A program made the position numbers and the translations under genes. The notes under the pieces are model-generated. The model saw only the letters and a list, made by a program, of their open reading frames with translations, was not told the origin of the DNA and ran no database searches. Shown piece after piece: positions 40,971 through 60,659 of a stretch of DNA of 64,000 nt (the first letter of the stretch is position 1; each line of letters starts with the position of its first letter). The DNA lies in NCBI RefSeq assembly GCF_021869535.1, contig NW_026262723.1, positions 100,998,001 to 101,062,000 on the forward strand, given 5' to 3'. Source of the stretch: Mytilus californianus (lineage: Eukaryota).

Positions 40971-43900
40971 TTAAGCCTCTGTTTTTGCTTGAGCATCTTT
41001 CTTCAGTGGACCCTGAAAAACAGAAGATATATATTAGAAATACAGATGAACATAGTGTTCATATTTCAAAACCAGAGTATCATCTTGTTGGTATGAGTAA
41101 AGTAAAAAAATATACCATTTATTTGTATTAAAAAGGTTGTCTATTAATGTATGTTAAAATAGAATTTATCCTGTATACCAGAAAATTCTTTTTGTGATTT
41201 TCTTTGTGCAGCATTTTAATCATGAATTTTTAAAATATTTTTGCGATCCATATTTTTTAGATTGATTTAGTGCAGTACTGAATATAAATTTGAATAGTTA
41301 ATCTATCAGAAGGAAGGCAACATGGTGAAATCTTCATTAGAATCAGGATATCCTGGCAGGGATATCATCCACGTTGTTCATCATTTAGATTAACAACTTC
41401 AAACGAACAAGGCATCTTGAAATAACCGTTTTACCCTTATTTTAAGTCCTTTTTAATAATGATGCCTGAAAGTAAACAAGAAAGCCTACCATAAAATTGT
41501 GTTTCTCCTTGAATGTCTGGAAACGTCCATGTCCAAATTTGCTGGCTGTGTCAATAAATTTCAAGTCAATCTTCTCCATTTGCTTCTTTTTAAATGATGC
41601 CAAGAGAGACTGCAAACAGAAACAAACACAAAATGTCATTTATATACAATGTGGATTTGTTTATGCTCTCAGATGGTATTAATTTTATTCATGTACAGAA
41701 TTGATATGCATTACAAGAATCAATCATCAGAAGGAAGGCAACATGGTGAAATCCTCATCAAATTCAGAGTATCCTGGCAGGGATACTTTCCATGTTTTTC
41801 ATCATAAATTGATTTTCAAGTTTCTATAGGATTACACAACAATTCATGTATCTGTATAGAATCTGAACATTTAAATGAAATGTTATAAAAATAAAAATAT
41901 CTTGTACACTCCTTACAATATATTTTATTGACATTGACATTAATGACTTTGGTACATGTTGGATCTAAATAAAATATACCTTTCTAAGTGTGACAACTCT
42001 CTTCTTAGGTCCGATACAACATCCCTTAATCATAACAAAGTCATTTGCTACTTCTCCATAGTGAGGAAATCCTCCCATTGGAGTGATTGGCTTCTCATCA
42101 GCATCATACTCAGTTGAACCATTGTTTGTAATAAGCTTGCCTTCCTTAGTATGGTATCCATCACCAAGACGATAGATCTTTTTGTTGATTTCAGTCCTGT
42201 GATGGTAACCCTTTTGTCCAGCTCTGGCCACAGTGAACTGGACACGACTTGGATGCCAGGCTCCAATACAAGCTACTTTACGCAGACCTTTGTGAGTCTT
42301 CCTTGGCAACTTCTTGCAGTGCCATCTGGATGTTACACCTATTAACATAAATATAATATATTAACCTAGAGGATAATGATGAGAGTCATCATAGACGGCC
42401 TTGCTGGGGTAAACAAATATATAATTTATAATAAGGCAAACAGAATAATGCATGCTTGTAGGTTATCAATATTTCTTGGAATTTATGGTGCAAGCAGATA
42501 TAAAAGAAGTTGCACATAATTTATGATAAAATTTGTGATTTTTAAACAAAAACAAACTTTATTTCCCAAATTAATGAGCTAAATTTCACCCAAAATATGA
42601 TATGAACGAAATTTCATTGGCCTCCTACCTATACTTTGGAGTTTTCGGGTTTACAAAATTTTTTGACAGACAGATGGACAAAGTGAAAACTATAGGGCCC
42701 TTATTAGTATCATCTAAAAGGTATTCAGTGTTAATTGATAAAAACAAACCTAACGGAAGGCATTCATTTTTTGATGCAACACTAATCCATCCCACAACTT
42801 CAAGGGGTTTTAAAGTAAAAGAGAGCTGAAATTTTTTAGTGCATATGCACAGGGACTGCCAAGTTAAACCAAGTTCTTAAATAGGACTTTCAATGTATGG
42901 ATTTCTTCCTTTTACCAGACACACCTTCTAGAAGTGGGGAAAAACATGTCAAATTCATTTCACAACTCTAAACAGATATGAAAGTTAGAGCTAAAACAAT
43001 TTTTGTACATGTGCACAGGTGTAAGTTGAACCAAGTTTTTAACTGGTTTTCTTCATTGTATGTGACACATTAAAACTAAGCTATTGTTATACTTGTTCAC
43101 CACCTTTCTACTGTTTACAATCTTACCTTTTACTCCTTTACCCTTGGTTACACCAATGATATCAATATTTTCATCCTGGGCAAACACATTTTTTACAGGT
43201 ATGCTCTTCTCAAAATAACTTTTAGCCCAGTCCACTTTCTGGGAGATGGTACCACCGTTAACTTGGATCTCCATAATATGGGCTTTCTTCTGACGTTTCT
43301 TCATCAACTTAGTCTGTAATAAAAATGATGGTACATGTATGCATTGATCACCTCATAAACCACTCCTCCAGAAATAGAATGTTATTTTTATTTTGGGTTG
43401 ACCAATAATTTTTTAAATGCCAGTGTTTAAATTAGACATGTCAAACATATGCCATTTTGATATGTATTTTCACTTTAATTGCAGTTGTGTTGTGTTTGCT
43501 TATTTGTAAATTATTTTATTGATCATTCATTTTTGCTGTATTCTCTCCATAATAGTTACAAGAAAATATACAAAAATAGCAGAAACCCTAAAAGGTGCAT
43601 GTCCTCAATTTGACAAAGATTACAGACTAATTTCAGACATTAACAAAAAAAGGTAAAAGTTCTTATATTGATCAAGTCATGAGTGTTTTCAAATTACAGA
43701 CGATTTATTTTGGACAAGGTAACAGTTTGCAGTAAGATATGACACAGATCAATCAGTTATTGCAATCTCAAATGCTGCATTTTAGTGGAGCACAAACAAA
43801 TATCAATTTTCAAGTCTTTGGTTTGACCTGACCTCCTGCACTTAAGAACAGCACGTTACCACTAGATTACTAAGGCATTTCTTTAGACTTGTCTACATTT

Positions 43901-46900
43901 CGAATAGAAATAATTGCCTTACCTGAGTATGGGCAAGGACTCGGATGACTCTACAGTACTTCTTCATCTTGTTGAAGTCACGCTCTATCTCTTTCTTTCC
44001 AGCCTCATCCTGCCATTTCTTGGCAGATTTAGTGAATGCCTTCTTCTTGGATCGGTACCTTAAATAAATATGAACCGTTTCATCATGAAATAATATTCAT
44101 GAGCGGAAACAGCATTGTAACAAGCTCATTGGTTTATAACCAAGAGGAGCTTCAAGTTGAGCCACTTTCCTAGTGATTGATAATGAGACACTGTCAATCT
44201 CTTGGCATCAATCACCTGTAAATATTGAAAAAAAGAAAGTGCACAATACAAATATATTCAAAATCATATATAATCATATGTATATCAATCTTGAACTTTC
44301 AATAACCTTCTCGAAAGATGTAAATATTTTATATGCAAATCATCCAGTCTGTCCTACTTGTGTCACAATTTAAACCAGCTCTCTCTGTACAAATATTCCA
44401 ATTGGAAATTTTCAAAACTACTTTGGCTGTTTTTTCATAATTTCAGCAGGAAGCAACTCCCAAAAAAAGTCTTTCAACTGCACTGGATTTTAAAAAATAA
44501 AAATAAAATTATGAGAAATGAAAAACCATAGAGATGGTGACAGATCACCTAAGCGCCATGTTGTCCCATAATAATAATTCTTGTTATGCATTGTTTTTGC
44601 AGCTATAAATATACAACTTATAGTTCATACCAATTCTTGTAAAAACGTCTTTTACATTCTTCACTAAGATGTTCAGCAAAGATGGTTTTAAATGCTCGTA
44701 ATCCACTTGGAGTTTCAATATATCCAACCACACCTACAACCATCATAGGTGGTGCCTCCAGTACAGTTACAGCCTCTACAATCTCCTTCTTGTGAGATTC
44801 TAGAAAATAAAATTGAAATGTCTTAGTCTCTGCTGGAAATCATCAAATACATGCTACATTTGGCCTAATAAAATAATATCTGTGTTACCGTTAAAATGTT
44901 AGGGTAGGAAGTTGAGTAAAAATTTGATTTCAAGTTGTTGACAGGGGAAAGAGTTTGACTTTAATATTAATAGCGCTTGTTCAAAAATGACCAAAAACTA
45001 TTCGGGGTAGGCAGGGTTAACAGAGAAGTATTATTTTTGTATGTATTTGATGTATGTCTATATTGTACCTCTTCATTTAGTGAGGACATTCATTTCAATC
45101 TCTGTTCACCTTATTCCTAGGAAAATCCTGTTTAGTCAAGATATTTGGCTGAACCTTTAAATGTTTTGTTAACAAGGTGGCTGTGGAACTGAATCATTTA
45201 ATTTTCAGTCATTTTTATATACATTTGTAGCAATGAAAATATAATTTTTCACAACCAATTATTTAAGAGTTCTCTCCAGAATTCTGTTATAGTGTTGTGG
45301 TAAGTTTTTAGATGTACATTACAAATGGCTGCAGACCATGCAATTCATTTTAAAATCCAAGCAATCCTCATTTTAATAGGATTTAAAATGATTTTTTAGC
45401 TACTTTCTATTGAGGATTGAACAGCAACCTTGATAGAATATGTTTACATCATTTTGCATTAAGTTTTCCCTTCATTTACAAGTTGTAAACAACTAATAAT
45501 GTAAGGGCAAGTTCTGATCAATTTTGGGCTTGTGCAGATTGAAGTTTGATTTCCAAAAAAAAATGAAACAGTAATGATTTTGTAGACAGGAGACACACGA
45601 ACCTGTTGTCAGTGAAAGGTAAATTTAGTTCAAAAGCTTGTGAACAACTTACTGGATATTTGAAATTGTCAGGTAAAATTGTTTAGGTAGGCACCAGAAA
45701 TTGGAAACTCTAAATCAATTGCAGTGTTACAATTGGATAATGCTGCACACCCCTTCACTTAAAACATCCTGGGAATAACACTTAAAGTTTAGGCCTAAAA
45801 AAAAAAAAAATCTGTGTTTCCGGTAACATCATTTTGTTAAATAGGGTCGGTAGGTCGGATTTCTTTTTTTTTGACATTGTATACGAAATCCGGAAAAATA
45901 TTATGGTTTTTCCACGTCCGTGTCCGTAATTAGTTTCAAATACCGGAAGTGCGGCCTTTGCAATGTTTTTGAAGCACCTGCTGTGCAAATTTCTTGGATT
46001 TTAACCTATTTGGAATACCTTTTTGACATAAATAAAATGTTTTACTGGCTTTCTGTGCAGTTAGATAAATAATTATGTTGATTAACAGAAGCCTGTGTCA
46101 AAAACAGGGTCGGTTGATACCAATTTTTTTTTTTTTTTTTGAAGATCCAATAAAAAAATTAGGGTCAGGGCTAAAAAAACAGGGTCGGTCGGGTTACCGG
46201 AAAACAGATTTTTTTTCTCTCTGCCTTAAGAAATTATACAAGTCCTTACTGCTCTGATAATATTCTTTTATAAGGTGTAATACCACCAAAACATGTTACG
46301 TCACATCAGGTTGCATACGAAAAAGGGTTGAAAAAATATTTCCTTGAATTTGACAGTTGAAGGAAAATAATCCTACATTTCATTGCAGTAAAAAATTTCT
46401 GAGTCATAAACATATATCTTGGATATTTCAAAGCCCCATTATTTTTTCATTTGGTGTTTCTATACAATATTTTGGAAACTTGAGGTTACATAGTTACTAA
46501 AGCTTGTACACGGAAAAAGAGGGTGAAAATTTGATTGGTTAAATTCCAGTGGTGGTTACTTTCTTATATGCAATGAAATGTTATGTGAAATTTTGTCTAT
46601 AGTACTGGACAGGATAAAACTTTACTCATGCCAAGTATTTCTTTATTTGAAACAAAGATAAATTCTGCACAATTTTTTGAAAAGTGAAAATTTAACAGAC
46701 TAATAGGGGAAAATCAATGGTGGTAGTACACCTATTACTGTAAATTAAATTTAAAATCAACATACTGGAGCCTGGTCTATCAACTTCTCTGACAATATGG
46801 GACATTCCTGCCTTGTATCCAATAAATGCTGTGAGATGAACTGGCTTATTCTTGTCATCATTGGGAAATGCCTTCACTTTTCCACGGTGGCGTTTGGCCC

Positions 46901-49900
46901 TCTTCTTGGGTAGGAAGCCTTTAGAACCGTGCCGAGGAGCCGAGAATTTTCTATGAGACTGAAAATATAAAAATAAAATATAAGGACTCTTCTTGCAATT
47001 TGAATTCAATGTATTATATTCATATATCAAAACCTACATGTAGTTAGAATTTCTCTCTATTATTTGTACTGTTAAACATGTTCAAACTAAACCCAAGTTT
47101 TATCAAGTCAAATCACACAATGTCGTGTTTCAAATTCTCAATAGATGAATGAATTGGTGCTCAACATCCAGTGGCAATTATTACATCAGGACTCATATTT
47201 TGATATAAACGGAATATGAACCCTGGTTAAGTACTAGACCAACACACTCTGACAGCCAGATTTCAACGTGCCAATTTACAAGGAAAACAGTGCAGGAAGA
47301 GCTACATTAACACATCATAACAACTGGGAGCTGATCAGTATTGTGCTTTTAGTCTTAATTTCACATACTAACATGTAGTGGAGAGGCAGCATATACCAAT
47401 TTTCAAGTCTTAAGTTTGTTCTGACAGATTGAACCCACAACTTGCCACATTAAAGAAGAAATTGGCAGTTGACCAATAGCTAATGTTTTACAAATTTGAC
47501 TAGGGTCCATTATGGAAAGAGTTCCAACTCTCATAATTTTGTTGTCCATTTCAATTTTCCAAAAAAACTCATTTTCAACAATATGAAGACACAGAAATAA
47601 GGAATTTGGAACATTTTTTTACTACCTTGTGAGGAACTGTTAATGGATTGTACTAGCAAAGAAAAACTGTCTTACATGCATGAAAATGTAAAGGATATAA
47701 TGCACATCCCAAAAACATGTAATGCACTTTAAATCTAATAATCAAGTTATGTCATGTCTAAACTCTACCAGGTGCGAAATTTTGTCTACTTGGTAAATTC
47801 AGAGTTGTAACCACTGCCATATTTTAAATTCCTACCGATGACCCTGTAATGAGCGCCAGTATCATGGACTTTCAGCGAATAAAATGTAAACATTGATTAA
47901 CAAAACACAATAAAATGCTCCGCTGGGCGCAGCTTGATACGACCACAGAGGTCGAACCCTGAACAGTTGGGGCAAGTATGGACACAACATTCAAGCTTGA
48001 TACAGCACTGAATTTGGATTGTGATTAAATATTTGACACAGCATAGGTTTCTGACACAGAATGAATGTGGTCCAAGAACTTAAAATTTTTTAATTTACCT
48101 ATTCAAACCATATCATTATTATTTGCTTTTATATATAAATCAGAAATAACCCATTTATAAAATGGAAAATTTTAAAGCAAAAAAAAATCCCTCCCCTAAA
48201 TTTTTTGAACCCCTTATGATTCATCACCCCCAAACTCAATCCCAGCCTTCCCTTTGTGGTATGGTACTTTGCAGTACAATTTCAGAGAGATCCATACACT
48301 TGAACACAAGTTATTGTCTGGAAACTAGAAAAATGCTTGTTTTTAGGCCCCAAATTCCTAAACGTTTATGGCAACTACCCCCAAACTCAAACCCAGCTTT
48401 CCTCTTGTGATATGGAACCTTGTAGTACAATTTCATAAAGATCCATACACTTACACACAAGTTATTGTCCTAAAACTAGAAAAATGCTTGTTTTTTTCCA
48501 CTTTTTTGGCCCCCAATTCCTAAAATTTTGAGGCAATTACCCCCAAAATCAATCCCAGCATTCCCTTTGTGATATGGAACCTTGTGGTACAATATCAGAT
48601 AGATCCATACACTAATACACAAGTTATGTCTGGAAGTTACAAAAATGCTTATTTTTGGCCCCTAATTCCTTAACTGTTGGTACCATAACCCCCAAAATCA
48701 ATCCCAACCTTCCTTTTGTGGTATTGAACCTTATGGTAAAATTTCATGGAGATCCATTTACTTAAAACTAAAGTTAGAGTGCGAAAACCAAAGTGTCTTC
48801 GGACGACGACGCCGTCATACCAATGGTTTCATGTCGATCAGGCCCCACGTCGATCCGGCCCATATTTAAAGTCGATTCCGGCCCAATAAAAAAATATATT
48901 TATAAGGAATAAAAATAAAGATATATATTAATTGTAATTCATAAATGTTTATGAATTTTATTATAACGTAAAAGGTGTACGGTAAAAAAAAAAGGCCTTT
49001 GACAAATATTTTCTTTAGATGAGTTTAAAACAACTATGTTGATTATGTTTTCATTACAAGTTTTCAAGATTATTGGGTATAATTATAATAAAAACGTATA
49101 TAACAGAATTTAGTACAATCAACAGACATCAACATTAATCAGCAGTAATTAGCATTTTCTTTCAATTGACTGTGATCTTACCAAGTCTTTCATCCTGTGT
49201 AATAACAAATAGTTACATACACAACGGTACAAGCCGATCCCCAAGCTGATACATACAAACTCCACTTCTACAAGATGGTTCCAGCGCTCATCAAGGAAGC
49301 CAAAACTGTTTCGAGGCAAGTGCGTCTGGTAGATGAACAGAGTCTTGCCCGTTGGCAATGCACCAAGTATAAAGTTCCAATGGGAACTATAAAATTCCCA
49401 TGGGAAAAGTACTTTTTCCGATGGGAACTTCTAATATTCTTATGGGAATTTTTAAAATTTTTACAAATTCCATTTACACTGTTAAAATTTGTCACAAAAT
49501 CCTCCAAAGTCAATATAGTTTATTCATATTTTATTATGGGGCCGGATCGACGTAGGGACGGATCGACGTGGGCCGGATCGACTTTGGGCCAGATCGACTT
49601 GGGGCCGGATCGGTTTGGGGACGGAACGACCGGATACCATACCAATATACGACCAAAAAATTTTCAATTTTTGCGTTCGTATAATAAGGTAGTGCTCTAC
49701 TTGGAGTTCAGTATTTTTTTTTACACTTTTCTATTAAAGTCTAATAAAGAGGAACATTTATGAAATGATTACTTTATAATAAAATTGAGAATGGAAATGG
49801 GGAATGAGTCAAAGAGACAAAACCCGACCAAAGAGCAGAAAACAGTCGAAGGCCATCAATGGTTCCAAGTTCAACACAGCGAGAAAATCCCGCAACCGGA

Positions 49901-50219
49901 GGCGGGCTTCAGCTGGCCCCTTAACAAAAATGTGTGCTAGTTCAAAACTCCAAAACATATAAATGAACTAAAATTAAAAAATATACAAGACCAACAAAGG
50001 CCAGAGGCTCCTGACTTGGGACAGTCGCAAAAATGCATATATGTACCATTGTCAAACATCCGAATTACTGTTTTTTTTTTCATAAATAATGCATTTAAAT
50101 TAAATTAAAACTAAAAGACATATAATTGATTGCTTATTATTGTAAATTAGTCTATAGAATCATCATTTTTATTGTTGGAAATCAGTGGATTTAAATGGAT
50201 TGAAAGTCCACGTTACCAT
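40971..50219 (-). CDS. RPL3: 60S ribosomal protein L3 (uL3), 8 coding exons, 402 aa
   Basis: Exons: 50219-50217 (ATG only), 46958-46766, 44799-44631, 44058-43923, 43313-43127, 42338-41980, 41609-41490, 41012-40971; total 1209 nt. Translation runs [18 protein letters not shown]... [30 protein letters not shown]... [13 protein letters not shown]... [19 protein letters not shown] lies at ~40938-40943. Confidence 0.98.
41297..41394 (-). ncRNA. SNORD83: Box C/D snoRNA, SNORD83 (U83)-like, in RPL3 intron 7
   Basis: Minus strand: C box ATGATGA, D' CTGA, C' TGAAGA, D CTGA, and a 9-bp terminal stem GTTAATCTA/TAGATTAAC. The guide-plus-D-box TTGCCTTCCTTCTGA matches the recalled 3' end of human U83B, which is also hosted in RPL3. 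Confidence 0.9.
41718..41814 (-). ncRNA. SNORD83: Box C/D snoRNA, SNORD83 (U83)-like, second copy in RPL3 intron 6
   Basis: Same architecture (ATGATGA...CTGA...TGAGGA...TTCACCATGTTGCCTTCCTT-CTGA) with terminal stem AATCAAT/ATTGATT. The internal hairpin covaries with the first copy. Confidence 0.9.
45789..46228. mobile_element. MITE in RPL3 intron 2
   Basis: Imperfect TIRs AAAAATCTGTGTTTCCGGTAAC / GTTACCGGAAAACAGATTTTTT with TTAG/TTAA flanks. Confidence 0.55.
47900..49685 (-). mobile_element. Family C HINE-like element in RPL3 intron 1, carrying a nested DNA transposon
   Basis: About 93% match by eye to the reverse complement of 54975-55153. GACGACGACGCCG tract and terminal hairpin ATACGACC...TTCGTATA. 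Confidence 0.65.
48825..49638. mobile_element. 814-bp non-autonomous DNA transposon with GG termini and 8-bp TSD
   Basis: TSD ATACCAAT at 48817-48824 and 49639-49646. Ends GGTTTC.../...GATACC. Multiple subterminal GTCGATCCGGCCC(C) repeats in inverted orientation at the two ends. Confidence 0.8.
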
Positions 50220-50237
50220 CTTCTGAGTTCGGCATGC

Positions 50238-50270
50238 AAAAAGAAGGAACAAGAATACGGCAACTTCCGG
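50238..50270 (-). promoter_or_regulatory. RPL3 5'TOP/TCT start and ETS (GABP-like) site
   Basis: On the minus strand TTCCTTCTTTTT (50249-50238) lies ~20 nt before the ATG|GT of exon 1, and CCGGAAGT is at 50270-50263. Both are typical of animal ribosomal protein promoters. Confidence 0.75.
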
Positions 50271-50695
50271 ATTCCCATTGACGAGGTACACGTAAGGAAA
50301 AATAAATCAAGATACTGACAAAACTTTTCACACAGAATATTTGAATTACATAAATGAAGATAAACAAATCAATTTCAAGAAAATATTAAGTCATAACTGT
50401 ATCTCCCTTTTCGTAAATAAGCCAAAATATTTTACTTAATTTCTCCTTCAGGCCTTTGGCCTCAACATTACGACAATCAGACACAGGGCAATAGTTTATA
50501 TCAGAGACAAAAATGAATAAGAATGTTCTACACGATTGTAGCATTTAAACTCAGATTATTTTTCTCCAATTGTTGATATAATTATATGTTCAGTATTTTA
50601 TATCAAGAGTAATGTCGTAAACAAAAAGGTAAACGGTGAAGGTCATTTATGAAGGATCCCAATTTTGTGGATGAACTGCATTGACGGCGTTGGAA

Positions 50696-53600
50696 ATGGC
50701 TAATAATGAGGAAAGGACCCCAAAAGGGGTAGAAAAGGGACTTGTAGCAATGTACAAAGTTCTTGATGGCCCTACATCTTGGGTTAAGGGTAAATGATTT
50801 GTCTTCTTTGAACTAGTTTGGACGCATTAAAGTTAACTCGAGCCACAGAAGGTCGGTTTTAACTTTTGTTTTACTTTACTCTTTAGAGGTCCCATCCCAT
50901 ATAGAGCTATACAAAACTAACGCTTTATGCCTTACCCTAAATCTGACCCTAACGCTGATCTCAACATTAGCCCTACCCCCAAAACTTATCTAATTGGAGA
51001 GCATGATTCTTATTATCTCCTTTGGGATCTCTGTGTTTCAAGTCTGCATGCTATGCTTATTTGGATTAAAGACGACTACCCCCTGTTGGGTATCGTAGCA
51101 GATTATCATATACTATGAAAATTGTTATAATTAATTTTCATGATTTCATATATAACTAATTTTATTCAGTATAAAATCCAGTACAAAAGGATCATCGCTG
51201 AAATACATGAAAACATAGAAAAAAAAAATAAAACAAAAGAGACAGCAAATGTGTGACGTATAACAAAAAATAGACAAAACACCCACATCAATATTATGCA
51301 ATTATTCCCACTGATGAATTTCTAATCATAATACATTTGTCTATATATATAAAAAGAAATCTGTTGAGAACATCAGTCTCTGAACAGTTCATTAAATATC
51401 TAAATTTATCAAAATTATCTAAATTACAAAAACATGGTAAAATATTAACAATGTCATCATTAAACTTTTTCCTCTCGTCATTCATAAATAAATTGAAAAG
51501 AAGGGGACTCAGTATACACCCTTGTTTTACACCAACATTTGAGAATATGGAATCAGTTAGTCAGGAATCTACCGGTAGTTTAACTGAATATCTAACACAT
51601 GTAATCATGTCTTTGATTAAATGGAAAACCCTGCCACTAATACCTTGCTCAAAAAGTTAAGAAAAGAGAAAATTCCTCCTTTTTCTAAGGTCAACAAAAC
51701 ACCAATATAGATATTTTTTTTGCCCTAAATATTTTATCCACAATAGATTTTAATGTATAAACATGATCAATTGTTCTGTTAGCTTTTCTAAAGTCTATTT
51801 GATTTTTACATAGTATGTTGTTCTCAGTTACAAATAAATCTAATCTGTTGCATAAGATCTTTACAAACAACTTACTTAGACAACTAGATATTGCTATATC
51901 TCTGTAGTTACATGTACTTGGATCTCTAACGTCTCCTGTTTTAAAAAGAGGTTTAATCATACTTTCTGTCCAACTACTCAGGCCATTCATTAGGAGGCGG
52001 TACCCGGTACTTTTACCCTCCTATGCTACAGATAAGTACCGCCTGAATTCAGAAATTTTTATATAAGATGTTCATTGAATATATTGAAAAGTACCACCTT
52101 CAAATAGGAATGTACCGGTCAACATGAAAGATAATGAAACCCCTGACTACTAGGAAATAAAGTTGATTTCAAAATGATATTGATAAGTTTGCAATTACAA
52201 TTCAACATATTCACACTAGAATGTTTAAGCATCTCATTACTTATACAGTCAAAACCTACACTTGTGTTATTCTTTAAACTTTTTATAGCTTTCAACACTT
52301 CCTGCATATTTATATCATAATCAAGTAAAACATTATACCTTGAAGGAAAATCATCCTGTTCATTACAACAATCTACATTTAAGAGTTTATCAAAATAATC
52401 ATACCATTCATCAGAGGGAATATTGGAACTCTGATCACTGATGTCCTTGTCAGAATATTTAAATTTATTAATAATATCCCAATAAGCCTTAGGATTTTTG
52501 TCTTCTAATTCCAGTAAGGAATCAAACATCTTTGCTTTATACTGTCGTTTTTTTTTCCATACTAGTTTTTTGAACTGCTTTTTTAGGTTATAGTAATTCT
52601 TCAACTTTTCTTCATTTACAGAACCCTTAGAGAGTGAACGAGAAGATTGGATTAAAGTATGATACATTGATTTGCACTCACTGTCAAACCCTAAACTAGA
52701 TTTCTTTCGTTTACGTTTTTTAGATTTAAACCTGTTACCCTTGGGAAGATTTAAATGACTTCTTATCTTATTGAGAATGTTGTGAAAAATATCTGTTAAA
52801 TCCTCAGTGGCTTCATCCACCCTGTTTCTTTGTAATACTCTGTCTTTACCTATGAATAGTTGTACATAAGATTCAACTTCCTTTGATAACATCATGTCTG
52901 CATAACATTTTTGAACCGCATTGTTCCATTATAAACCCTTAGGTATTGGTCTCCCAACTTTTTGTTGTACTTGAGAATAATTTAAAGATAGACATACATT
53001 TATAGGACAGTGATCAGAGTGGACGGTAAAATCCTTTACAGTAAAAAAACATACATTTTTAGCATATTATTACTAACAATACAATAATCAACAACAGCAC
53101 TACCATTATATTGATGGGAAGTGGGTTTGCCTTATGTATCACCTAAAGTTTGCCCATTTAGAATTCTGCTTCTAGATGATATGCAAAGCTCTAATAGGCG
53201 TTTTCCGTAATCATCAGTCTTAGTATTCTTTTTAGTACAATGTCTCCTATAATGTACATTATCTGCCAAATATGAATTAGGAAGTATATCTTGTAAACTT
53301 TTGATATGATCACATTAAAAATATTTCCAAATCATTTTTTATACGACCGCAAAAAAATTTGTGGTCGTATATTGATATGACGTTGGCGGCGTCGTCGTCG
53401 TCGTCCGAAGAAACATTGGTTTTCGCACTCTAACTTTAGTTTAAGTGAATGGATCTCTATGAAATTTTACCATAAGGTTCAATACCACAAAAGGAAGGTT
53501 GGGATTGATTTTGGGGGTTATGGTACCAACAGTTAAGGAATTAGGGGCCAAAAATAAGCATTTTCTAGTTTCCAGACAATAACTTGTGGAATAGTGTATG

Positions 53601-56600
53601 GATCTCTCTGAAATTATACCACAAGTTTCCATACCACAAAGGGATGGTTAGGATTTGCTTTGGGGGGTTATGGCTCAAACTGTTTAGGAATTAGGGGCAA
53701 AAAAGGGGAAAAACAAGGTTGTCCTGGTTAATGGACAAATACTTTAGTACAAAACATAATTTAAAGCAGTGTAAGGGAGATAAATCAAATACAATATTTG
53801 AATAACCTCCCTTACACTGCTTTTAAATTATGTATAAAGTAATGGTTAATGAACAATTAAGACAATTTAAAACAGTGTAAGGGAGGTAATCCAAATACAA
53901 CGTTTTGATTACTTCCCTTACACTGCTTTTAAATTATGTTTAAAGAAATGCATATTTATAAAGGAAGACCAGTAAAAATATCTGCAAATGTTGCATCTTT
54001 TTTTTTTTACTAAAAAATCCATATGAAAGATTTGACACCATATTTTAAATTCTATTATAAGATAGATTAAGTTAGCATTATGGTAAAAAGAAATTGTGGG
54101 GGGGTCATTTTTTTCTCATTTCAGATTTCAGAAATTAAAATGAATTATTCTTCAAATTTTTTTTTTTTTCAAATTTCAAATATTGAAAAATTTCAAGAAG
54201 TAATCTTTAATTGCACAGTATGGTGCATTAGATTTGTAAAATCTTTGACCACATTTATTTATTTGTTATGAAGAATCTAACCGTGTATTTAGATTTTTAA
54301 TTTTGGGTCCAGTTTTCAAATTGGTCTACATTAAGGTCCAAAGGGTCCAAAATAAACTTAGTTTGATTTTAACAAAAATTGAATATATGGGGTTCTTTGA
54401 TATGCTGAATCTAACCATGTATTTAGATTTTTTATTTGTGGGCCCCACTATCAAATTGGTACATATTGAGGTCAAAAGGGTCCAAAATTAAACTTTGTTT
54501 GATTTCATCAAAAATTGAATTCTTGGGGGTTCTTTGATATGCAAAATCTAACCATGTATTTAGATTTTTAATTTTGGGTCCCGTTTTTTAAATTAAGGTC
54601 CAAAGGGTCCAAAATTAAACTTGGTTTTATTTTAACAAAAATTGAATTCTTGGGGTTCTGTGATAAGCTGAATCTAAACATGTGTTTAGATTTTTGATTA
54701 TGGGCCCAGTTTTCAAGTTGGTCCAAGTTGGGGTCCAAAATTAAACTTTGTTTGATTTCAACAAAAATTGAATATATGGGGTTCTTTGATATGCTGAATC
54801 TAACCATGTATTTTGATTTTTGGGCCCCGTTATCAAATTGGTCCACATTGAGGTCAAAAGGGTCCAAAATTAAACTTTGTTTGATTTCATCAAAAATTGA
54901 ATTCTTTGGATTCTTTGATGAGCTGAATCTAACCATGTATTTAGATTTTGGATATTGGACCATAATAGGTAAATTAAAATTTTTTAAGTTCTTAGACCAC
55001 ATTCATTCTGTGTCAGAAACCTATGCTGTGTCAAATATTTAATCACAATCCAAATTCAGAGCTGTATCAAGCTTGAATGTTGTGTCCATACTTGCCCCAA
55101 CTTTTCAGGGTTTGACCTCTGCGTATCAAGCTTCGCCCAGCGGAGTATTTTATTGTAGTTTCCGGACAATAATTTGTGTATAAGTGTATGGATCTCTCTG
55201 AAATTGTACCACAAGGTTCCATATCACACAGGGAAGGCTGGGATTGAGTTTGGGGTTAATTGCCCCAAACGTTCAGGAATTAGGGGCAAAAAGGGGCAAA
55301 TAACAAGCATTTTTCTAGTTTCCAGACAATAACTTGTGTTTAGGTGTATGGATCTCTCTAAAATTGTACTACAAGGTTCCATACCATAAAGAGAAGGCTG
55401 GGATTGAGTTTGGGGGTAATTACTCCAAAAGGGGGGGTGGGGGGTTTAAAAAGTTGGGGGGATTTTTTTTCCAATTTTTTGGGGGGGGTTCATTTTTTTT
55501 CAAATTTTTCAAATCTTCAATTTCACAGTATTGCTTTATAGCAAGAAATCTTCAATTGCACAGTATTGTGCAATAGCACAGTAATTGACAATAGCACAGT
55601 ATTGGGCAAAAGCAAGTAATCTTCAATTGCACAGTATTGCGCAATAGCAAGAAATCTTCAACTGCACAGTATTGCGCAATAGAAAGAAATTTTCAATTGC
55701 ACAGTATTGCGCAATAGCAAAAAATCTTCAATTGCACAGTATTTCGCAACAACACAGTATTGCGCAATAGCAATAGAGGAAATCGTCAGATCTACTCACA
55801 AGTCACATTTTGCTGATAAAGGTGGTAGGCTGTCACTCTTTATAGGAGTGATTGCCCAGCCCCTTAAATAAGGATTTTTGTTACCCTCTTTTGTGTTTTG
55901 AGCAAAAACTAAAGAAGATGGAGAGAAACTAAACAGACTAAATGATCAGGAATACAAGATCAACAAAACAGAGATTTTTCTTATGAATTCTATTCTTGTC
56001 TTCAATGTTGGAGAGTTTCCTTTGTTGAATATGCACATAGACCAAAGTGAGCAACACAGGCTCTTTAGAGCCTGTAGTTATACATAGGGTACACACAATA
56101 ACGACAGATGTAAAAATAGGTCATTGAAGGTCAATCATGTGTATCAATGTAAATAATTGGCCCTACCCCTCAGTCTGAGTCATGGTCTATTGACTTTGAA
56201 ACTTTTGCATGTTTTATTTTGAATAGGTATTTGGACTCTCTAAGACTTTTTTATACATGTACTTACTAATTTGTAAAGACTGATAAGAAAAAATAACCTA
56301 AACTCTTTTATACAGGGACTGGGTATATTGGTCTTGGGACTAGAATATGGCAAAAAACTCTGTTTTTTCTGCTTGTAGTTGGATAAGTTCTGACTCTTGT
56401 ATTGTATGTTTGCTGTAATGGTAAAGTAATAGTTGTGTGGTGAAGGCTAGTCTAAGCAGAAGGAAAATAAAACTTTATAAATTTAGTTTGTCCAGAGCAT
56501 GTGCATATAAACTCTTGAAAGTTGAAAGCCACAGATGTAAAAATACTTAAATACTTAAACAGCTACAAAATATAGTACTTTAAAGAGATTCTATATCATT

Positions 56601-59532
56601 GCAGAAACATTTGTACAGCCATTCCAGAAAAAATACCCATACTATCACAGAAGATTTAACCGAGTACCAACAATTGATCAATGTGATGTAAATGAAGCAG
56701 CATGTATATATGAAGCACAGGAACAGTGGAAAAGAGACAAGTAAGTTCAGCTTCTGATAGAAGATAGAACAGCATCAACTGGTTAATGCTTTTGTTAATT
56801 ATGACCATTATTTGAGAGTTTGAGACTGTATTGTTTCTTAATATTTTTTTGCTGGTACTCATGTTTTTTTTTTAGCTATTTTACTGTTATTAAAGAATTA
56901 AGTACTTTTCCAGTACTAACTTTTATTGTACAGTCCACTTTTGTTAACTAAAAGTTTATCAGACTGACTTTGAGTGATGAAAACAATTTGAAATTAAAAG
57001 AATTTTGAGATGTAAGGAGTAAATGTAAGGTTGTCACTGAATAGAAGTTCCTTCATAACATAAGTTCCAAACGGAAACAATATTCTGGAATATTATTTCC
57101 ACTGGAATAAATATTACAGTAAATGTTCCCAAACGGAATAAATGGTATAGAATATTTGTTCCAACAGGAACAGATATTATGACATTGTTTATAACAAAGT
57201 TTCCAGTGGAACTTCTGTTAGGCGGAACAAATATACGTTGACAAGGTAAATCTATATATATTGGGAGAGACAGACCTTTGACTTTGAGAGAACAGCAAGT
57301 TTGAGATGAGTTAGAGACAATGGGAGTCAACTGTATGTTCTATGTACCTTTTGTAAGTCCATTGATTGAGATTAAAAAAGGGGTAGGGATGAGATCTCAG
57401 AGACTTATGACTTGCCATAAGTTTTCCATTTGTATGGGCAAAGAAATATTACTGGTACACACATTGTATATCAAAAGTTTCTAAACTATGATGTAAAAAA
57501 AATAATATGTTAATTTTTTTAGCAAGATAACATTTTATAATCAATATGCAATTTGTTTGTCTAGAACATCTTGTTTTCAGTTTATTAAAGTACTAGTCAT
57601 TATATATTCATTTCAAGTTACAATTTCAAAGGTACAATTTGAGTTATTAATAAGTTGACCTTTTCATATTTTTAGAATGGTGGACAGTAAAATTGTAAGA
57701 ATATTGAAAGATCGGTATATAGATTGTAATTACTATGAGGGAGAAGATGCACCTGTAAAGTGTGCATCCATAGCAGCAGTGAGTGAAGAGGCAGCCACAA
57801 ACTGGTTTATAAAATGTACGTATTCTTACATTGTTCTTTCTCTGCTCGTAATTATCTGTCTTCACAAAAATACTTTTTGACTTGCAGGCAATGAAAAAAT
57901 CAGTCTTTCATAAGATTTCTTTATATTTATATGGCTTGTGAGGCATCTTTTCAGAAAATTTTACTGGCCATTCAACATTTTGCTGGCCTGGGTTGTAAGG
58001 TTTATGGTTAATTGTGAAAACTGCATTATTGTCATTTGCATTGTTAAACTAAACTGAGCCTGTTTATTGGTTAGTATTACCAAAATTTATGCTATTTATA
58101 CAAATTTATTATTTAGTACATGATATATTGAGGATAAAACTAAGGTAGGGACTATAAGATATTTTATGACAACTACTTTGAAGACAATAATTTCAGTATT
58201 AATTTGTTCCTTACCATCAACTTCTTATATGCCAACTCTTTTAACAAACTGTTTTTAAAATCCTTATGGTGGAGTAATAAACATTGAAATTAACCTTTCC
58301 TTGAATAAGTCTTAGGTTTTAGTTAACTTTTTGAGAAAATATGTTCCAATTTTAAAATAAAGGTACTTTGACATAAAAAGAAAACTAAAAAAGATAAAAA
58401 GTTTTGTACTTTTAGGTTATAGGTTTAAAATTTTAAAACTCTCTGCACATTTGGAATTCATTGCAAGAACCTTGAAGGGGTTCAAAGATGGCCTGTCGAG
58501 TCTTTTGTAAGGCAAAACTTTGGTTCAAATCCAACATGCCCTCATTTTCAAGTGTCTGTCCATATTTTCTGCCTTCATCTTAGTCAATCCACCTTGCAGA
58601 GTCTACCTATTAAACTTATTGTTAATTTGTTCTGGTCCTGAATATGCATTGGATTTTTGCCAGTAGATTAATTGAATGATAGTTGAATTGTAAACAACAA
58701 TCAATCAATCAATCAATCTAGTGTCAAATATTTGCCACTAGCAAAGATCAAGCAAAATATTTTTTTCTCTTAAACATATTAAAAAAATTTCTGGTATCTT
58801 GTCATGTTTTTTCAATATCAAGAAATGTTTTAAAAAAAAATGTATATTCAGTGTCATGAGTTTGTTAAGTGAGTTATGATTTAAAACAAATAATCTATTA
58901 TAATTTAGTGTTGTCTTGCACATCAAATCAATTGAATGAAAAATGAAAATAACTTCAACTGGATAAATTGAATCTTTGGCAGTGATTAGATATTATAAAA
59001 TATTATCAAAATAGAAGGTCAAAATGAACATATTTTATACAGTCAAGACATCAAATAAGGACATAGTAATTTCAGTCCTCATATTTACTGTACTTCTATA
59101 CCTCTTCATTTATTACAGATGTTCTACAATTATGTCTAAGAATACTACACTACCAAACTGTGGGTAGCCCCCTGCCCAAAACTGGTGTATTGTCACTTGC
59201 ACATCTTTTTTTTTTTGCAGTCAAATTTCTGGCAAAAAAACCTTTTAAATGTACAAGGTTTTTAGCCATTTTCTGGTAGTATCTGGTTGTACAAGGTATT
59301 TCTTGTAAGAAATAAGTTATCCATGAGGCAAGAATACACTTTTTGAAAGACTGTGAATAATACAGACATTATACAACATCAGTTGATTTATATTTGCATG
59401 TTTTTTTTAAGCATTACTTATTTATCCTTTGTAGATGGTGATTTAGGATATAATTCTACAGTTGTTGAAGCTTACATGAAACAAAAGCATAGAATGATCT
59501 GGGAACGACGAAAGTCAGCTGAAGCTGTGTAG
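50696..59532 (+). CDS. NDUFB10: NADH dehydrogenase (ubiquinone) 1 beta subcomplex subunit 10 (PDSW), 4 exons, 155 aa
   Basis: Exons 50696-50789, 56605-56740, 57676-57815, 59435-59532 (468 nt, phases consistent). Translation MANNEE...LDGPTSWVKETFVQPFQKKYPYYHRRFNRVPTIDQCDVNEAACIYEAQEQWKRDKMVDSKIVRILKDRYIDC...C...YGDLGYNSTVVEAYMKQKHRMIWERR aligns with recalled NDUFB10 motifs. AATAAA at 59562. Confidence 0.93.
51300..53290 (-). mobile_element. Degenerate LINE (CR1/L2-like) ORF2 remnant, antisense in NDUFB10 intron 1
   Basis: Endonuclease remnant (TDDYGKRLLELC; SDHCPI), linker (ORF 52119-52895) and RT motifs (YRDIAISSCLSKLF; NQIDFRK; GVKQGCILSPLLFNLFMND), then an abrupt jump to C-terminal sequence. 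Confidence 0.88.
53336..55775 (+). mobile_element. Composite family C HINE-like element with ~130-bp satellite-like core and 35-bp terminal array
   Basis: Starts TTTTTATACGACCGC...GGTCGTATA plus a (GTC)n tract. ~130-bp repeats at 54290-54960 (GGTCCAAAGGGTCCAAAAT) and ATTGCGCAAT-containing units at 55560-55775. Confidence 0.7.
57042..57217. mobile_element. Uninterrupted paralog of the same MITE, in NDUFB10 intron 2
   Basis: Same TIRs and shared internal blocks (GGAATATTAT..CC.CTG..A..AAATATTACAGTA; CATTGTTTATAACAAAGTTTCCAG.GGAACTTCT). Confidence 0.7.
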
Positions 59533-60659
59533 ATTGCTCTGACAGTTTCATATGAATCTTTAATAAAACATTAGTGAAAGAATGATATTTGTTTGAAATA
59601 GTGTATTGTGATGGCAAATAAATTTATATTTGTGGAAACTTTGTCTCATTTTATTGTTAAGCAAGGCTTAGTTTGTTGGTTTTAGGATCTGCCAACCTGA
59701 TTTTTTCAAATTTTTAGAAAAGGAAAAAACTTGTATATTCCTGCTTTTTAGATCTCACCAGCCCTAGAAAAAAATTATCCCTAAAATGTAAATGAAATAT
59801 ATTTGCAGAAAATATTTCACCTTGACCACTGTGCTTGTGTTCTAAAATAATAAATCTAAAAAAAGCCAATAGCAGCAGATAAGGAAATGCACTTTAAGCA
59901 AATAATTTTATGGAATGAAAAGTAAAGCACTCAGTATAAGTAAATAAGAAAAATGTCAATCAGTGAAAATTAAAAAAATCTGTTTTCAAATTTGCTGCAT
60001 ATTTTGTTGCTGAACAAGCTTGATCCTTTATAAACTTTGTAGAGGAAACATAAATTGGAAACTCAAATGCATGAATTGGATCAAAATGAATCCAACGATT
60101 CAAACAAAAATGTGTCAGTGTTAAACTAGTTTTTACCACACCTGGGCTAATAAGGCCATATGAGCTCATTGTAAACTTTTTCAAAAATCTTTTCCTCTAA
60201 AACTGCAAAACCAATTTGAACCAAACTTGGACTGAATGATCCTTAGATCCTTAGAGTATCTAGTATAAAGTTTTTGTTTTTTATTCATGTCTGTCAAGAA
60301 TTATGGCAGCCATGGCTTAAAAAGAACAACAGAGTAAAATGCTTTTATTGTCCTATGTCTTATATCTTGAAAACTATAAAAGAAAAAATCAGGGGCAAAT
60401 TTGTTTAGAATGTCAAGATCTACATTCCTCCTGTTTGCATCAAAATTATCAGAATACTTCTTAAGGAGTTATTGCCCTTAAATGACAATTTTTGGCTAAT
60501 TGTCATGTTTTTGCCTATTAACTCAAAAACTCTATTAGTTAGGTAGAAACTTTTATTTGCGAAAGAAATTAAACCATTCCCAAGAATCAGTTAGTGTTTA
60601 CATAGTCATATAAATTTTTGCAAAAGAAACTGTTCCATTGAATAAATACAATGAATATT

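What the first reader, a model, noticed from the sequence alone, without database searches (positions are those of the whole stretch)
50217..50789. RPL3 and NDUFB10 are head-to-head, mirroring human RPL3L-NDUFB10
Seen: the RPL3 ATG (50219, minus) and the NDUFB10 ATG (50696, plus) are ~480 bp apart and share a promoter region containing a TOP/TCT tract and an ETS site. Established (recalled): on human 16p13.3 the muscle paralog RPL3L lies head-to-head with NDUFB10, while the SNORD83-hosting RPL3 lies elsewhere. Inference: the pairing predates the protostome-deuterostome split. After vertebrate duplication, RPL3L kept the ancestral neighbour and RPL3 kept the snoRNAs; here both traits occur on one gene. 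This would be ancient co-regulation of a ribosomal and a complex I subunit.
Basis: partly seen in the sequence, partly recalled or inferred. Interest (0 to 1): 0.7.

Follow-up and report, generated by a model that had tools for sequence, protein, structure and literature searches.

The report
Ancient RPL3–NDUFB10 head-to-head gene pair
In this mussel genome the ribosomal protein gene RPL3 and the complex I subunit gene NDUFB10 start 476 bp apart on opposite strands, and the same arrangement in seven other animal lineages shows it dates back at least to the last common ancestor of protostomes and deuterostomes.

Summary
RPL3 (minus strand, ATG 50217-50219) and NDUFB10 (plus strand, ATG 50696) are both real, single-copy genes in this Mytilus genome. 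476 bp separate their start codons. NDUFB10 exon 1 (50696-50789) is joined to exon 2 (56605) by 168 stranded RNA-seq reads across a GT..AG intron, so its transcription start is not elsewhere.

I surveyed 10 kb either side of NDUFB10 in eleven other animals.
- **Same head-to-head pair (7):** scallop, brachiopod, annelid, crinoid, acorn worm, amphioxus and a bird. Spacers are 247-1944 bp.
- **Absent within 10 kb (4):** spider, horseshoe crab, priapulid and Xenopus.

The bird locus continues as in the published human locus order RPL3L-NDUFB10-RPS2. Its RPL3-like gene is the divergent paralogue and carries no SNORD83-like snoRNA.

Mussel RPL3 carries two SNORD83-like snoRNAs, in introns 6 and 7. 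Homologues sit in RPL3 introns of scallop, amphioxus, crinoid and annelid.

"Co-regulation through a shared promoter" is not shown. The TOP tract and ETS site lie on the RPL3 side, and no motif is shared across species.

This is a new member of a known kind (a conserved ancestral head-to-head pair). I found no paper reporting it. Non-bilaterians were not tested.

The parts
50217..50249 (-). RPL3 exon 1. A short 5' leader starts in a pyrimidine (TOP-like) tract and ends with the ATG (50219-50217), the only coding triplet. The GT donor is at 50216-50215.
   Evidence: Sequence. The same 'ATG only, then GT' first exon, with a pyrimidine tract 20-30 nt upstream, occurs in annotated RPL3 of amphioxus, Lingula, scallop, annelid and crinoid. 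The 5' end is inferred, not mapped.
50238..50249 (-). TOP/TCT-like pyrimidine tract, TTCCTTCTTTTT on the minus strand.
   Evidence: 12-nt run found and read.
50263..50270 (-). ETS/GABP-type site CCGGAAGT, 13 nt upstream of the TOP tract.
   Evidence: 2 matches in the window against 0.38 expected. Not conserved in the other species' spacers.
50220..50695 (.). Divergent spacer of 476 bp between the two start codons (33% GC). It must hold both core promoters.
   Evidence: Homologous spacers in other species are 247-1944 bp.
50696..50789 (+). NDUFB10 exon 1, coding part: 31 codons plus 1 nt (phase 1). It ends in the conserved ..LDGPTSWVK motif.
   Evidence: Splice to 56605 in 168 RNA-seq reads. 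Aligns to the (I/L/V)DxP(V/T)(T/S)W(F/V)(R/K) region of homologues. Same intron position as in scallop, whose exon 1 is 32 aa.
50790..56604 (+). NDUFB10 intron 1 (5815 bp, GT..AG), filled with repeats and a reverse-transcriptase fragment.
   Evidence: Joint; RVT_1 hit on 51691-51987.
56605..56740 (+). NDUFB10 exon 2.
   Evidence: PF10249 positions 7-58, 69.5 bits. Translation. Matches fly and mammalian NDUFB10 chains in the PDB at E 2e-11.
57676..57815 (+). NDUFB10 exon 3.
   Evidence: PF10249 positions 50-101; splice sites read.
59435..59532 (+). NDUFB10 exon 4, coding part, ending in TAG. An AATAAA lies at 59562-59567.
   Evidence: PF10249 positions 102-126; sequence.
46766..46958 (-). RPL3 exon 2 ([12 protein letters not shown]...DRPGS).
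41980..44797 (-). RPL3 exons 3-6. Approximate positions are 44624-44797, 43887-44060, 43119-43316 and 41980-42339. Only the exon 6 donor (exon ends at 41980) was read exactly.
   Evidence: PF00297 matches, converted to window coordinates; ORFs; sequence.
41490..41609 (-). RPL3 exon 7 ([40 protein letters not shown]).
40971..41012 (-). RPL3 exon 8, coding part ([13 protein letters not shown], then stop). An AATAAA lies about 30 nt downstream.
41719..41814 (-). SNORD83 (U83B)-like C/D box snoRNA, copy A, in RPL3 intron 6.
   Evidence: Rfam snoZ13_snr52 34.2, snoU83 31.6 and snoU83B 29 bits, all full-length but below gathering. The C box, D box and guide CCATGyTGCCTTCCT are invariant in a 7-sequence, 5-species alignment.
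41299..41392 (-). SNORD83 (U83B)-like C/D box snoRNA, copy B, in RPL3 intron 7.
   Evidence: Rfam snoU83 37.3 bits (E 7.8e-4) and snoU83B 27.5 bits, below gathering. It has the same boxes and guide as copy A.

Best explanation
These are the single-copy mussel genes for ribosomal protein uL3 (RPL3) and complex I subunit NDUFB10 (PDSW). They are transcribed divergently from a 476-bp spacer.

The arrangement is inherited, not convergent. It was already present in the last common ancestor of protostomes and deuterostomes. It has survived in lophotrochozoans (bivalves, brachiopod, annelid) and in deuterostomes (crinoid, hemichordate, amphioxus, and a bird, where the RPL3 copy is RPL3L). It was broken in the sampled ecdysozoans and in Xenopus. 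The ancestral RPL3 also hosted SNORD83-type snoRNAs in its 3' introns. After the vertebrate duplication, the copy next to NDUFB10 became RPL3L and lacks them, while canonical RPL3 kept them.

Most likely reason for persistence (inferred, not shown): the two compact housekeeping core promoters sit back to back in one short promoter region. Any breakpoint between them would then damage an essential, highly expressed gene. Whether the genes also share regulatory elements and are co-regulated is open.
For: Gene identity:
- PF00297 and PF10249 match above cut-off at this locus only.
- Exon 2 of NDUFB10 matches PDB NDUFB10 chains.
- The RPL3 protein starts MSHRKF across the exon 1/2 joint.
- 168 stranded RNA reads join NDUFB10 exon 1 to exon 2.

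Ancestry:
- An identical head-to-head adjacency occurs in 7 of 11 other lineages sampled. All were confirmed by tblastn.
- ATG-to-ATG spacers are 247-1944 bp.
- The outer flanking genes differ between phyla: Kelch, Rhomboid, Tektin or RPS2-like. The junction itself is therefore more stable than its surroundings.
- Gene structure is conserved: the RPL3 first coding exon is the ATG alone in 6 species, and the NDUFB10 intron 1 position is shared with scallop.

Vertebrate side:
- The bird locus holds RPL3-like, NDUFB10, a SNORA64 host, ACA64 and a WD40 gene, in that order.
- The human locus is named RPL3L-NDUFB10-RPS2 in bioRxiv 10.64898/2026.06.23.733628.
- The bird RPL3-like exon is 79% identical to mammalian RPL3.

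snoRNAs: and PMC3412847.

Background: the ETS factor GABP is reported to direct bidirectional transcription (title and abstract of PMC2077898, listed).
Against: - No non-bilaterian was sampled, so the age has only a lower bound.
- The four negatives rest on a 10-kb flank and on public annotation plus tblastn. A pair pushed more than 10 kb apart would be missed.
- Shared regulation is unsupported. The TOP and ETS elements lie within 55 bp of the RPL3 ATG and about 430 bp from the NDUFB10 ATG. The ETS 8-mer is absent from the seven other spacers, and no 7- or 8-mer is shared beyond shuffled controls.
- Spacer length varies eight-fold.
- From my own knowledge, vertebrate RPL3L is muscle-restricted and NDUFB10 is ubiquitous, yet they stay adjacent. 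That argues against obligatory co-expression.
- Neither transcription start was mapped to the base.
Confidence: 0.85

Rival explanations
1. Selected co-regulation. The spacer is a true shared bidirectional promoter, for example ETS/GABP-driven. It couples output of a cytosolic ribosomal protein with a complex I subunit, and this coupling is what selection has preserved.
For: Divergent orientation with a spacer under 0.5 kb. An ETS consensus lies in the spacer. GABP is reported to direct bidirectional transcription (PMC2077898). Irimia et al. 2012 found that conserved microsyntenic pairs are enriched for 5'-5' orientation and short spacers (PMC3514665). The orientation is conserved in 8 lineages.
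Against: The ETS site is mussel-only, and no motif is shared among the 8 spacers beyond chance. The known elements sit on the RPL3 edge. The spacer reaches 1.9 kb in the annelid. The vertebrate partner RPL3L is tissue-restricted (PMC10313321). The pair was lost in several lineages. No expression correlation was measured.
Confidence: 0.3
2. Neutral survival. There are two independent promoters, and the pair persists only because the spacer is a tiny target for rearrangement and the lineages that keep it have slowly rearranging genomes.
For: All positive lineages are known from the literature, on my recollection, as conservative genomes. The negatives are ecdysozoans and a frog. No conserved spacer motif was found. 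Spacer length is free to vary.
Against: The genes just outside the pair differ among phyla, so these neighbourhoods have been rearranged while this one junction stayed intact in eight lineages. Eight-fold retention of one specific junction since before the protostome-deuterostome split is more than is typical for adjacent genes. Only about 600 such pairs were reported across metazoans (my recollection of PMC3514665).
Confidence: 0.3
3. Convergence. The adjacency arose independently in molluscs and in chordates.
For: None found. It is absent in 4 of 11 other lineages sampled.
Against: The same orientation and immediate adjacency occur in seven further lineages from both sides of the bilaterian tree. 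The intron-exon structure of both first exons is shared.
Confidence: 0.02

Closest known systems
Human RPL3L-NDUFB10-RPS2 locus on 16p13.3
   Same: The same two gene families are immediate neighbours. The bird orthologue of that locus shows the same head-to-head orientation, with a spacer of at most 893 bp. The locus order is named in bioRxiv 10.64898/2026.06.23.733628.
   Different: In vertebrates the partner is the muscle paralogue RPL3L. No SNORD83-like snoRNA was found in the bird copy. RPS2 follows NDUFB10 in vertebrates, whereas in the mussel RPS2 lies 62 Mb away on the same contig. The mussel has one RPL3, which is both the neighbour and the snoRNA host.
Conserved ancestral microsyntenic pairs (CAMPs) with 5'-5' orientation, e.g. 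HSPD1-HSPE1 (Irimia et al. 2012, PMC3514665; Davila Lopez et al. 2010, PMC2871058)
   Same: An adjacent, divergently transcribed pair of housekeeping genes with a short spacer. Adjacency and orientation are conserved across distant animal phyla.
   Different: [quoted passage not shown] RPL3 and NDUFB10 have no direct functional link, and sharing is unproven. The pair is not named in the main texts. It is also absent from the seven held supplementary files of Davila Lopez et al.. The Irimia supplement is not held, so it could not be checked.
GABP/ETS-driven bidirectional promoters of mammals (Collins et al. 2007, PMC2077898)
   Same: Divergent starts less than 1 kb apart, with a CCGGAAGT site in the spacer.
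   Different: There is no CpG island (33% GC). The single site is next to one gene only and is not conserved in other species.
SNORD83A/B in human RPL3 introns 5 and 7 (Rfam RF00593; PMC3412847)
   Same: Two C/D box snoRNAs lie in 3'-proximal introns of RPL3, with a conserved guide next to the D box.
   Different: The mussel copies score below Rfam's gathering cut-off, and the scallop copies score above it. In sponges the SNORD83 homologue is reported in RPP0, not RPL3.

Membership tests
RPL3 / uL3 (Pfam PF00297) | Ribosomal_L3 domain match above the curated cut-off over the whole protein | tested here: met
   Five exon matches of 55.7-195 bits cover profile positions 2-363 of 369, at one locus only in the genome. 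The exons are 60-94% identical to RPL3 of seven other animals.
RPL3 / uL3 (Pfam PF00297) | Typical ribosomal-protein gene start: pyrimidine (TOP) tract at the 5' end and a short first exon | tested here: inconclusive
   The tract and the ATG-only exon are present and conserved in six species. The transcription start itself was not mapped.
NDUFB10 / PDSW (Pfam PF10249) | NDUFB10 domain match above the curated cut-off | tested here: met
   Exons 2-4 score 69.5, 37.8 and 30.5 bits over profile positions 7-126, at a single locus. PDB NDUFB10 chains match at E 2e-11.
NDUFB10 / PDSW (Pfam PF10249) | A complete, expressed open reading frame with the family's N-terminal region | tested here: met
   Exon 1 is spliced to exon 2 in 168 RNA reads. 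The four exons give 155 codons in frame. The motif LDGPTSWVK aligns with homologues. The joined protein was not sent to any search tool.
Bidirectional (divergent) promoter gene pair | Opposite strands, 5' ends facing, starts less than 1 kb apart | tested here: met
   The ATGs are 476 bp apart, so the transcription starts are closer than that.
Bidirectional (divergent) promoter gene pair | Shared regulatory elements or correlated expression | not tested
   No expression comparison was possible. The motif survey found nothing shared across species.
Conserved ancestral microsyntenic pair (CAMP) | Adjacency of orthologues in several distant phyla, inferred for their common ancestor | tested here: met
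   Adjacency was found in Mollusca (two bivalves), Brachiopoda, Annelida, Echinodermata, Hemichordata, Cephalochordata and Vertebrata.
Conserved ancestral microsyntenic pair (CAMP) | Conserved relative orientation | tested here: met
   All eight lineages are head-to-head (same calls).
Conserved ancestral microsyntenic pair (CAMP) | Presence outside Bilateria (cnidarians, placozoans, sponges) | not tested
SNORD83 / snoU83B (Rfam RF00593) | Score at or above Rfam's gathering cut-off (35 bits) | tested here: not met
   The mussel copies score 29 and 27.5 bits. The scallop copies, in the same host gene, score 43.2 and 40.2 bits.
SNORD83 / snoU83B (Rfam RF00593) | C box, D box, terminal stem and a conserved guide next to the D box, in an RPL3 intron on the host strand | tested here: met
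   TGATGA, CTGA and CCATGyTGCCTTCCT are invariant in seven sequences from five species. The terminal stems were read. Expression was not tested.

The most novel reading that the evidence does not exclude
The RPL3-NDUFB10 divergent pair is a selected regulatory unit, a truly shared promoter that ties production of a cytosolic ribosomal protein to that of a complex I subunit. It is older than Bilateria. The reported influence of RPL3L-containing ribosomes on mitochondrial activity in mammalian heart would then be a remnant of, or connected with, this ancient cis-linkage.
Probability: 0.12. Interest if true: 0.7.

Novelty: new member of a known kind. Interest (0 to 1): 0.45.

Why it matters
The finding gives a dated, well-sampled example of a head-to-head junction that has survived since before protostomes and deuterostomes split, while the genes around it were reshuffled.

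It also clarifies the origin of the vertebrate muscle paralogue RPL3L. RPL3L sits at the ancestral NDUFB10-linked position, while canonical RPL3 kept the ancestral SNORD83 snoRNAs. This is reciprocal loss after duplication.

Because eight lineages carry spacers of 0.25-1.9 kb, the question "shared promoter or merely no room for a breakpoint" becomes directly testable with CAGE, ATAC and reporter assays.

It does not change any current view. Conserved divergent housekeeping pairs are an established category.

Tried and rejected
- **Exon 1 peptide alone:** the 31-aa peptide found nothing in the PDB, and BLASTP against one homologue found nothing. Against another it gave only a weak 14-aa match (E 0.005). 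Its assignment rests on the RNA joint, the reading phase and the multiple alignment.
- **Nearest database protein:** the Mytilus trossulus model XP_063447078.1 (P0001) lacks this exon 1 and runs into introns at both ends. I take it for a faulty model, not evidence against exon 1.
- **Rfam at gathering thresholds:** no match anywhere in the window. The snoRNAs appeared only with E-value thresholds.
- **Extended synteny in the mussel:** RPS2 (PF00333) is on the same contig but 62 Mb away. No Rhomboid gene is near.
- **Shark look-up:** it returned a 715-bp intronless NDUFB10-like gene without DNA, which was uninformative.
- **Shared promoter motifs:** I scanned the eight spacers for ETS, NRF1-like, YY1-like, CRE and Sp1 motifs and for shared 7- and 8-mers. 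Nothing exceeded shuffled controls.
- **Literature:** six full-text searches and two microsynteny papers, one with its supplements, gave no report of this pair as conserved.
- **PDB test for RPL3L:** the PDB holds no vertebrate RPL3L chain, so I used identity to canonical RPL3 plus synteny instead.
- **Not done:** the joined (spliced) protein models were not sent to any search tool; exons were searched one by one by reference. No human sequence was fetched or compared.


Full report
**What is in the window**

The window is C143:100998001-101062000 of a 1.65-Gb, 175-contig genome. GC content is about 32%. The nearest database protein to NDUFB10 exon 2 is a Mytilus trossulus model at 98% identity. 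One RNA run holding the locus is labelled "mollusc metagenome". I tested the identity only to genus level.

**RPL3**

- On the minus strand, an ATG at 50219-50217 is followed directly by GTAACG.
- It is preceded by the pyrimidine tract TTCCTTCTTTTT (50249-50238) and, 13 nt further upstream, by CCGGAAGT (50270-50263).
- Exon 2 begins at 46958 right after an AG, so the product starts M|[12 protein letters not shown].
- PF00297 matches five exons covering profile positions 2-363 of 369. Nothing else in the genome matches.
- I read exon 7 (41490-41609) and exon 8 (coding 40971-41012) by hand.
- Annotated RPL3 genes of amphioxus, Lingula, scallop, annelid and crinoid have the same first exon: ATG only, then a GT donor, with a pyrimidine tract 20-30 nt upstream. 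This supports the exon 1 model without reads.

**NDUFB10**

- PF10249 matches only three exons, at window positions 56.6, 57.7 and 59.4 kb.
Exon 2 starts at 56605 after CATTGCAG, also in phase 1.
- Together with exons 57676-57815 and 59435-59532, the frame stays open for 155 codons plus the stop.
- Exon 2 aligns to residue 27-30 onward of fly NDUFB10 in the PDB, so about 30 N-terminal residues were expected upstream.
- The end of exon 1 (VLDGPTSWVK) aligns with the conserved (I/L/V)DxP(V/T)(T/S)W(F/V)(R/K) stretch of homologues.
- Decisive evidence: 168 reads of a stranded raw RNA-seq run (X24), from 75 start positions, skip exactly 50789 to 56605 with GT..AG ends. Depth over exon 1 was 86.9 with the first mate on the minus strand and 0 on the plus strand, which indicates a plus-strand RNA.
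- A contig from an independent RNA run (X15) has the last 13 nt of exon 1, with one mismatch, directly before 56605.
- I chose the laid stretch (50650-56649, the 6-kb limit) to span the joint. As a result, the NDUFB10 5' end upstream of 50650 and RPL3 exon 1 were not covered. No pile of read starts was reported between 50650 and 50695.

**Synteny survey**

I searched with NDUFB10 exon 2 and then with full-length homologues to obtain named proteins from annotated genomes. I looked up their loci with 10-kb flanks, always placing NDUFB10 on the plus strand.

A Ribosomal_L3 gene on the minus strand lies directly upstream in seven lineages:

| Lineage | ATG-to-ATG spacer (bp) |
|---|---|
| Scallop, Ylistrum balloti | 247 |
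| Crinoid, Anneissia japonica | 315 |
| Brachiopod, Lingula anatina | 427 |
| Mussel (this window) | 476 |
| Amphioxus, Branchiostoma floridae | 713 |
| Hemichordate, Ptychodera flava | 752 |
| Bird, Lagopus leucura | at most 893 |
| Annelid, Paralvinella palmiformis | 1944 |

tblastn with the mussel RPL3 exon peptides confirmed RPL3 on the minus strand in all seven loci. It found none in the four negative loci: spider Parasteatoda, horseshoe crab Tachypleus, Priapulus and Xenopus tropicalis.

The genes beyond the pair differ between phyla:
- Kelch/BTB in amphioxus.
- Rhomboid in Lingula (and in Priapulus, which lacks the pair).
- Tektin in both ambulacrarians.
- An RPS2-like gene in the bird.

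Independent origin of the same immediate, same-orientation adjacency in eight lineages is not credible. The pair therefore dates at least to the protostome-deuterostome ancestor and was lost in the sampled ecdysozoans and the frog. Non-bilaterians could not be sampled.

**The vertebrate side and the snoRNAs**

In the bird locus, NDUFB10 is followed by a 286-aa gene on the minus strand that holds SNORA64. Next come ACA64 and a WD40 gene. This fits the human locus, which a 2026 preprint calls RPL3L-NDUFB10-RPS2. That human RPS2 hosts SNORA64 is my recollection.

The bird's RPL3-like exon is 79% identical to mammalian RPL3, too low for the canonical gene. No U83-like snoRNA was found in it at E 0.1 or better.

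In the mussel, two C/D box RNAs lie in RPL3 introns 6 and 7, at 41719-41814 and 41299-41392 on the minus strand. They match Rfam snoU83B, snoU83 and Z13/snR52 over full length but below gathering.

Related RNAs on the host strand in RPL3 introns occur in:
- scallop: two copies, 43.2 and 40.2 bits, above gathering
- amphioxus
- crinoid: two copies
- annelid

The seven-sequence alignment has an invariant C box, an invariant D box and the invariant guide CCATGyTGCCTTCCT. Human SNORD83A/B lie in RPL3 introns 5 and 7 (PMC3412847).

One ancestral gene had both traits, and after duplication RPL3L kept the neighbour while RPL3 kept the snoRNAs.

**How it works**

- **Shown:** divergent orientation, a 476-bp spacer, and expression and splicing of NDUFB10 from this start.
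- **Inferred:** both core promoters lie in this spacer.
- **Not shown:** shared regulation.

The TOP tract and ETS site lie within 55 bp of the RPL3 ATG. CCGGAAGT occurs twice in the window against 0.38 expected, and 7 of 100 shuffles do as well. It is absent from the other seven spacers, and no 7- or 8-mer is shared among the eight spacers beyond shuffled controls.

My preferred explanation for persistence is that two compact promoters of essential genes stand back to back and leave no harmless breakpoint. Selected co-regulation and plain neutral survival are the rivals. Expression data and a genome-wide null would decide between them.

**Comparison and novelty**

This belongs with the conserved ancestral 5'-5' microsyntenic pairs described by Irimia et al. 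2012 and Davila Lopez et al. 2010. Neither main text names the pair, nor do the seven held supplementary files of the latter. The Irimia supplement is not held, so prior listing there cannot be excluded. Six literature searches found no report of the conservation.

I file it as a new member of a known kind, of moderate interest.

**Limits**

- The joined spliced proteins were not submitted to any search; exons were searched singly by reference.
- No human sequence was fetched.
- The human orientation is recalled, and was checked only through the bird orthologue and a paper's locus name.

Noticed in passing
window 41299-41392 and 41719-41814 (minus): Two SNORD83/U83B-like C/D box snoRNAs lie in consecutive RPL3 introns. 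The guide CCATGyTGCCTTCCT is invariant from mussel to amphioxus, crinoid and annelid. PMC3412847 calls its target unknown.
   Followed up: yes
window 53250-56250 (NDUFB10 intron 1): Repeat-rich stretch with very high summed depth in RNA contig runs, up to about 8e5. RNA-seq reads there have many internal joints and loose ends. It looks like a family of abundant, transcribed interspersed repeats.
   Followed up: no
window 51691-52895 (minus): Degenerate reverse-transcriptase ORFs inside NDUFB10 intron 1, with a weak RVT_1 match (E 3e-4) on 51691-51987. Probably a dead non-LTR retrotransposon.
   Followed up: partly
window 24649-28116 (minus): A 1155-aa uninterrupted ORF with an EF-hand pair and WD40 repeats. 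That is unusually long for an intron-free frame in this genome.
   Followed up: partly
window 14387-15733 (plus): A 448-aa ORF with PNMA / retrotransposon-gag similarity (E 3.6e-7), in a stretch of strong positive GC skew.
   Followed up: partly
P0001 = XP_063447078.1 (Mytilus trossulus): The public NDUFB10-like model of M. trossulus (136 aa) lacks the true first and last exons and reads into introns at both ends. It is probably an annotation error.
   Followed up: partly
L010:7032-7127 and 8269-8365 (minus); L011:8421-8490 (minus): Amphioxus RPL3 introns hold two SNORD14 matches above gathering (67.8 and 75 bits). A Lingula RPL3 intron holds a SNORD31 match (60.5 bits). The snoRNA cargo of RPL3 differs between phyla.
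   Followed up: no
L015 and L020 (16-22 kb); L011 and L016 (16-25 kb): A Tektin gene lies tail-to-tail after NDUFB10 in both ambulacrarians. A Rhomboid gene lies tail-to-tail after NDUFB10 in Lingula and in Priapulus, although Priapulus has lost the RPL3 neighbour.
   Followed up: no
G000:C143:38687256-38688178: The only RPS2 (Ribosomal_S5) locus lies on the same contig as the pair but 62 Mb away. In birds and humans RPS2 directly follows NDUFB10.
   Followed up: partly
P0386 locus (Scyliorhinus torazame, no DNA served): The shark NDUFB10-like gene spans only 715 bp for 174 aa, so it has no room for introns. It may be a retrocopy.
   Followed up: no
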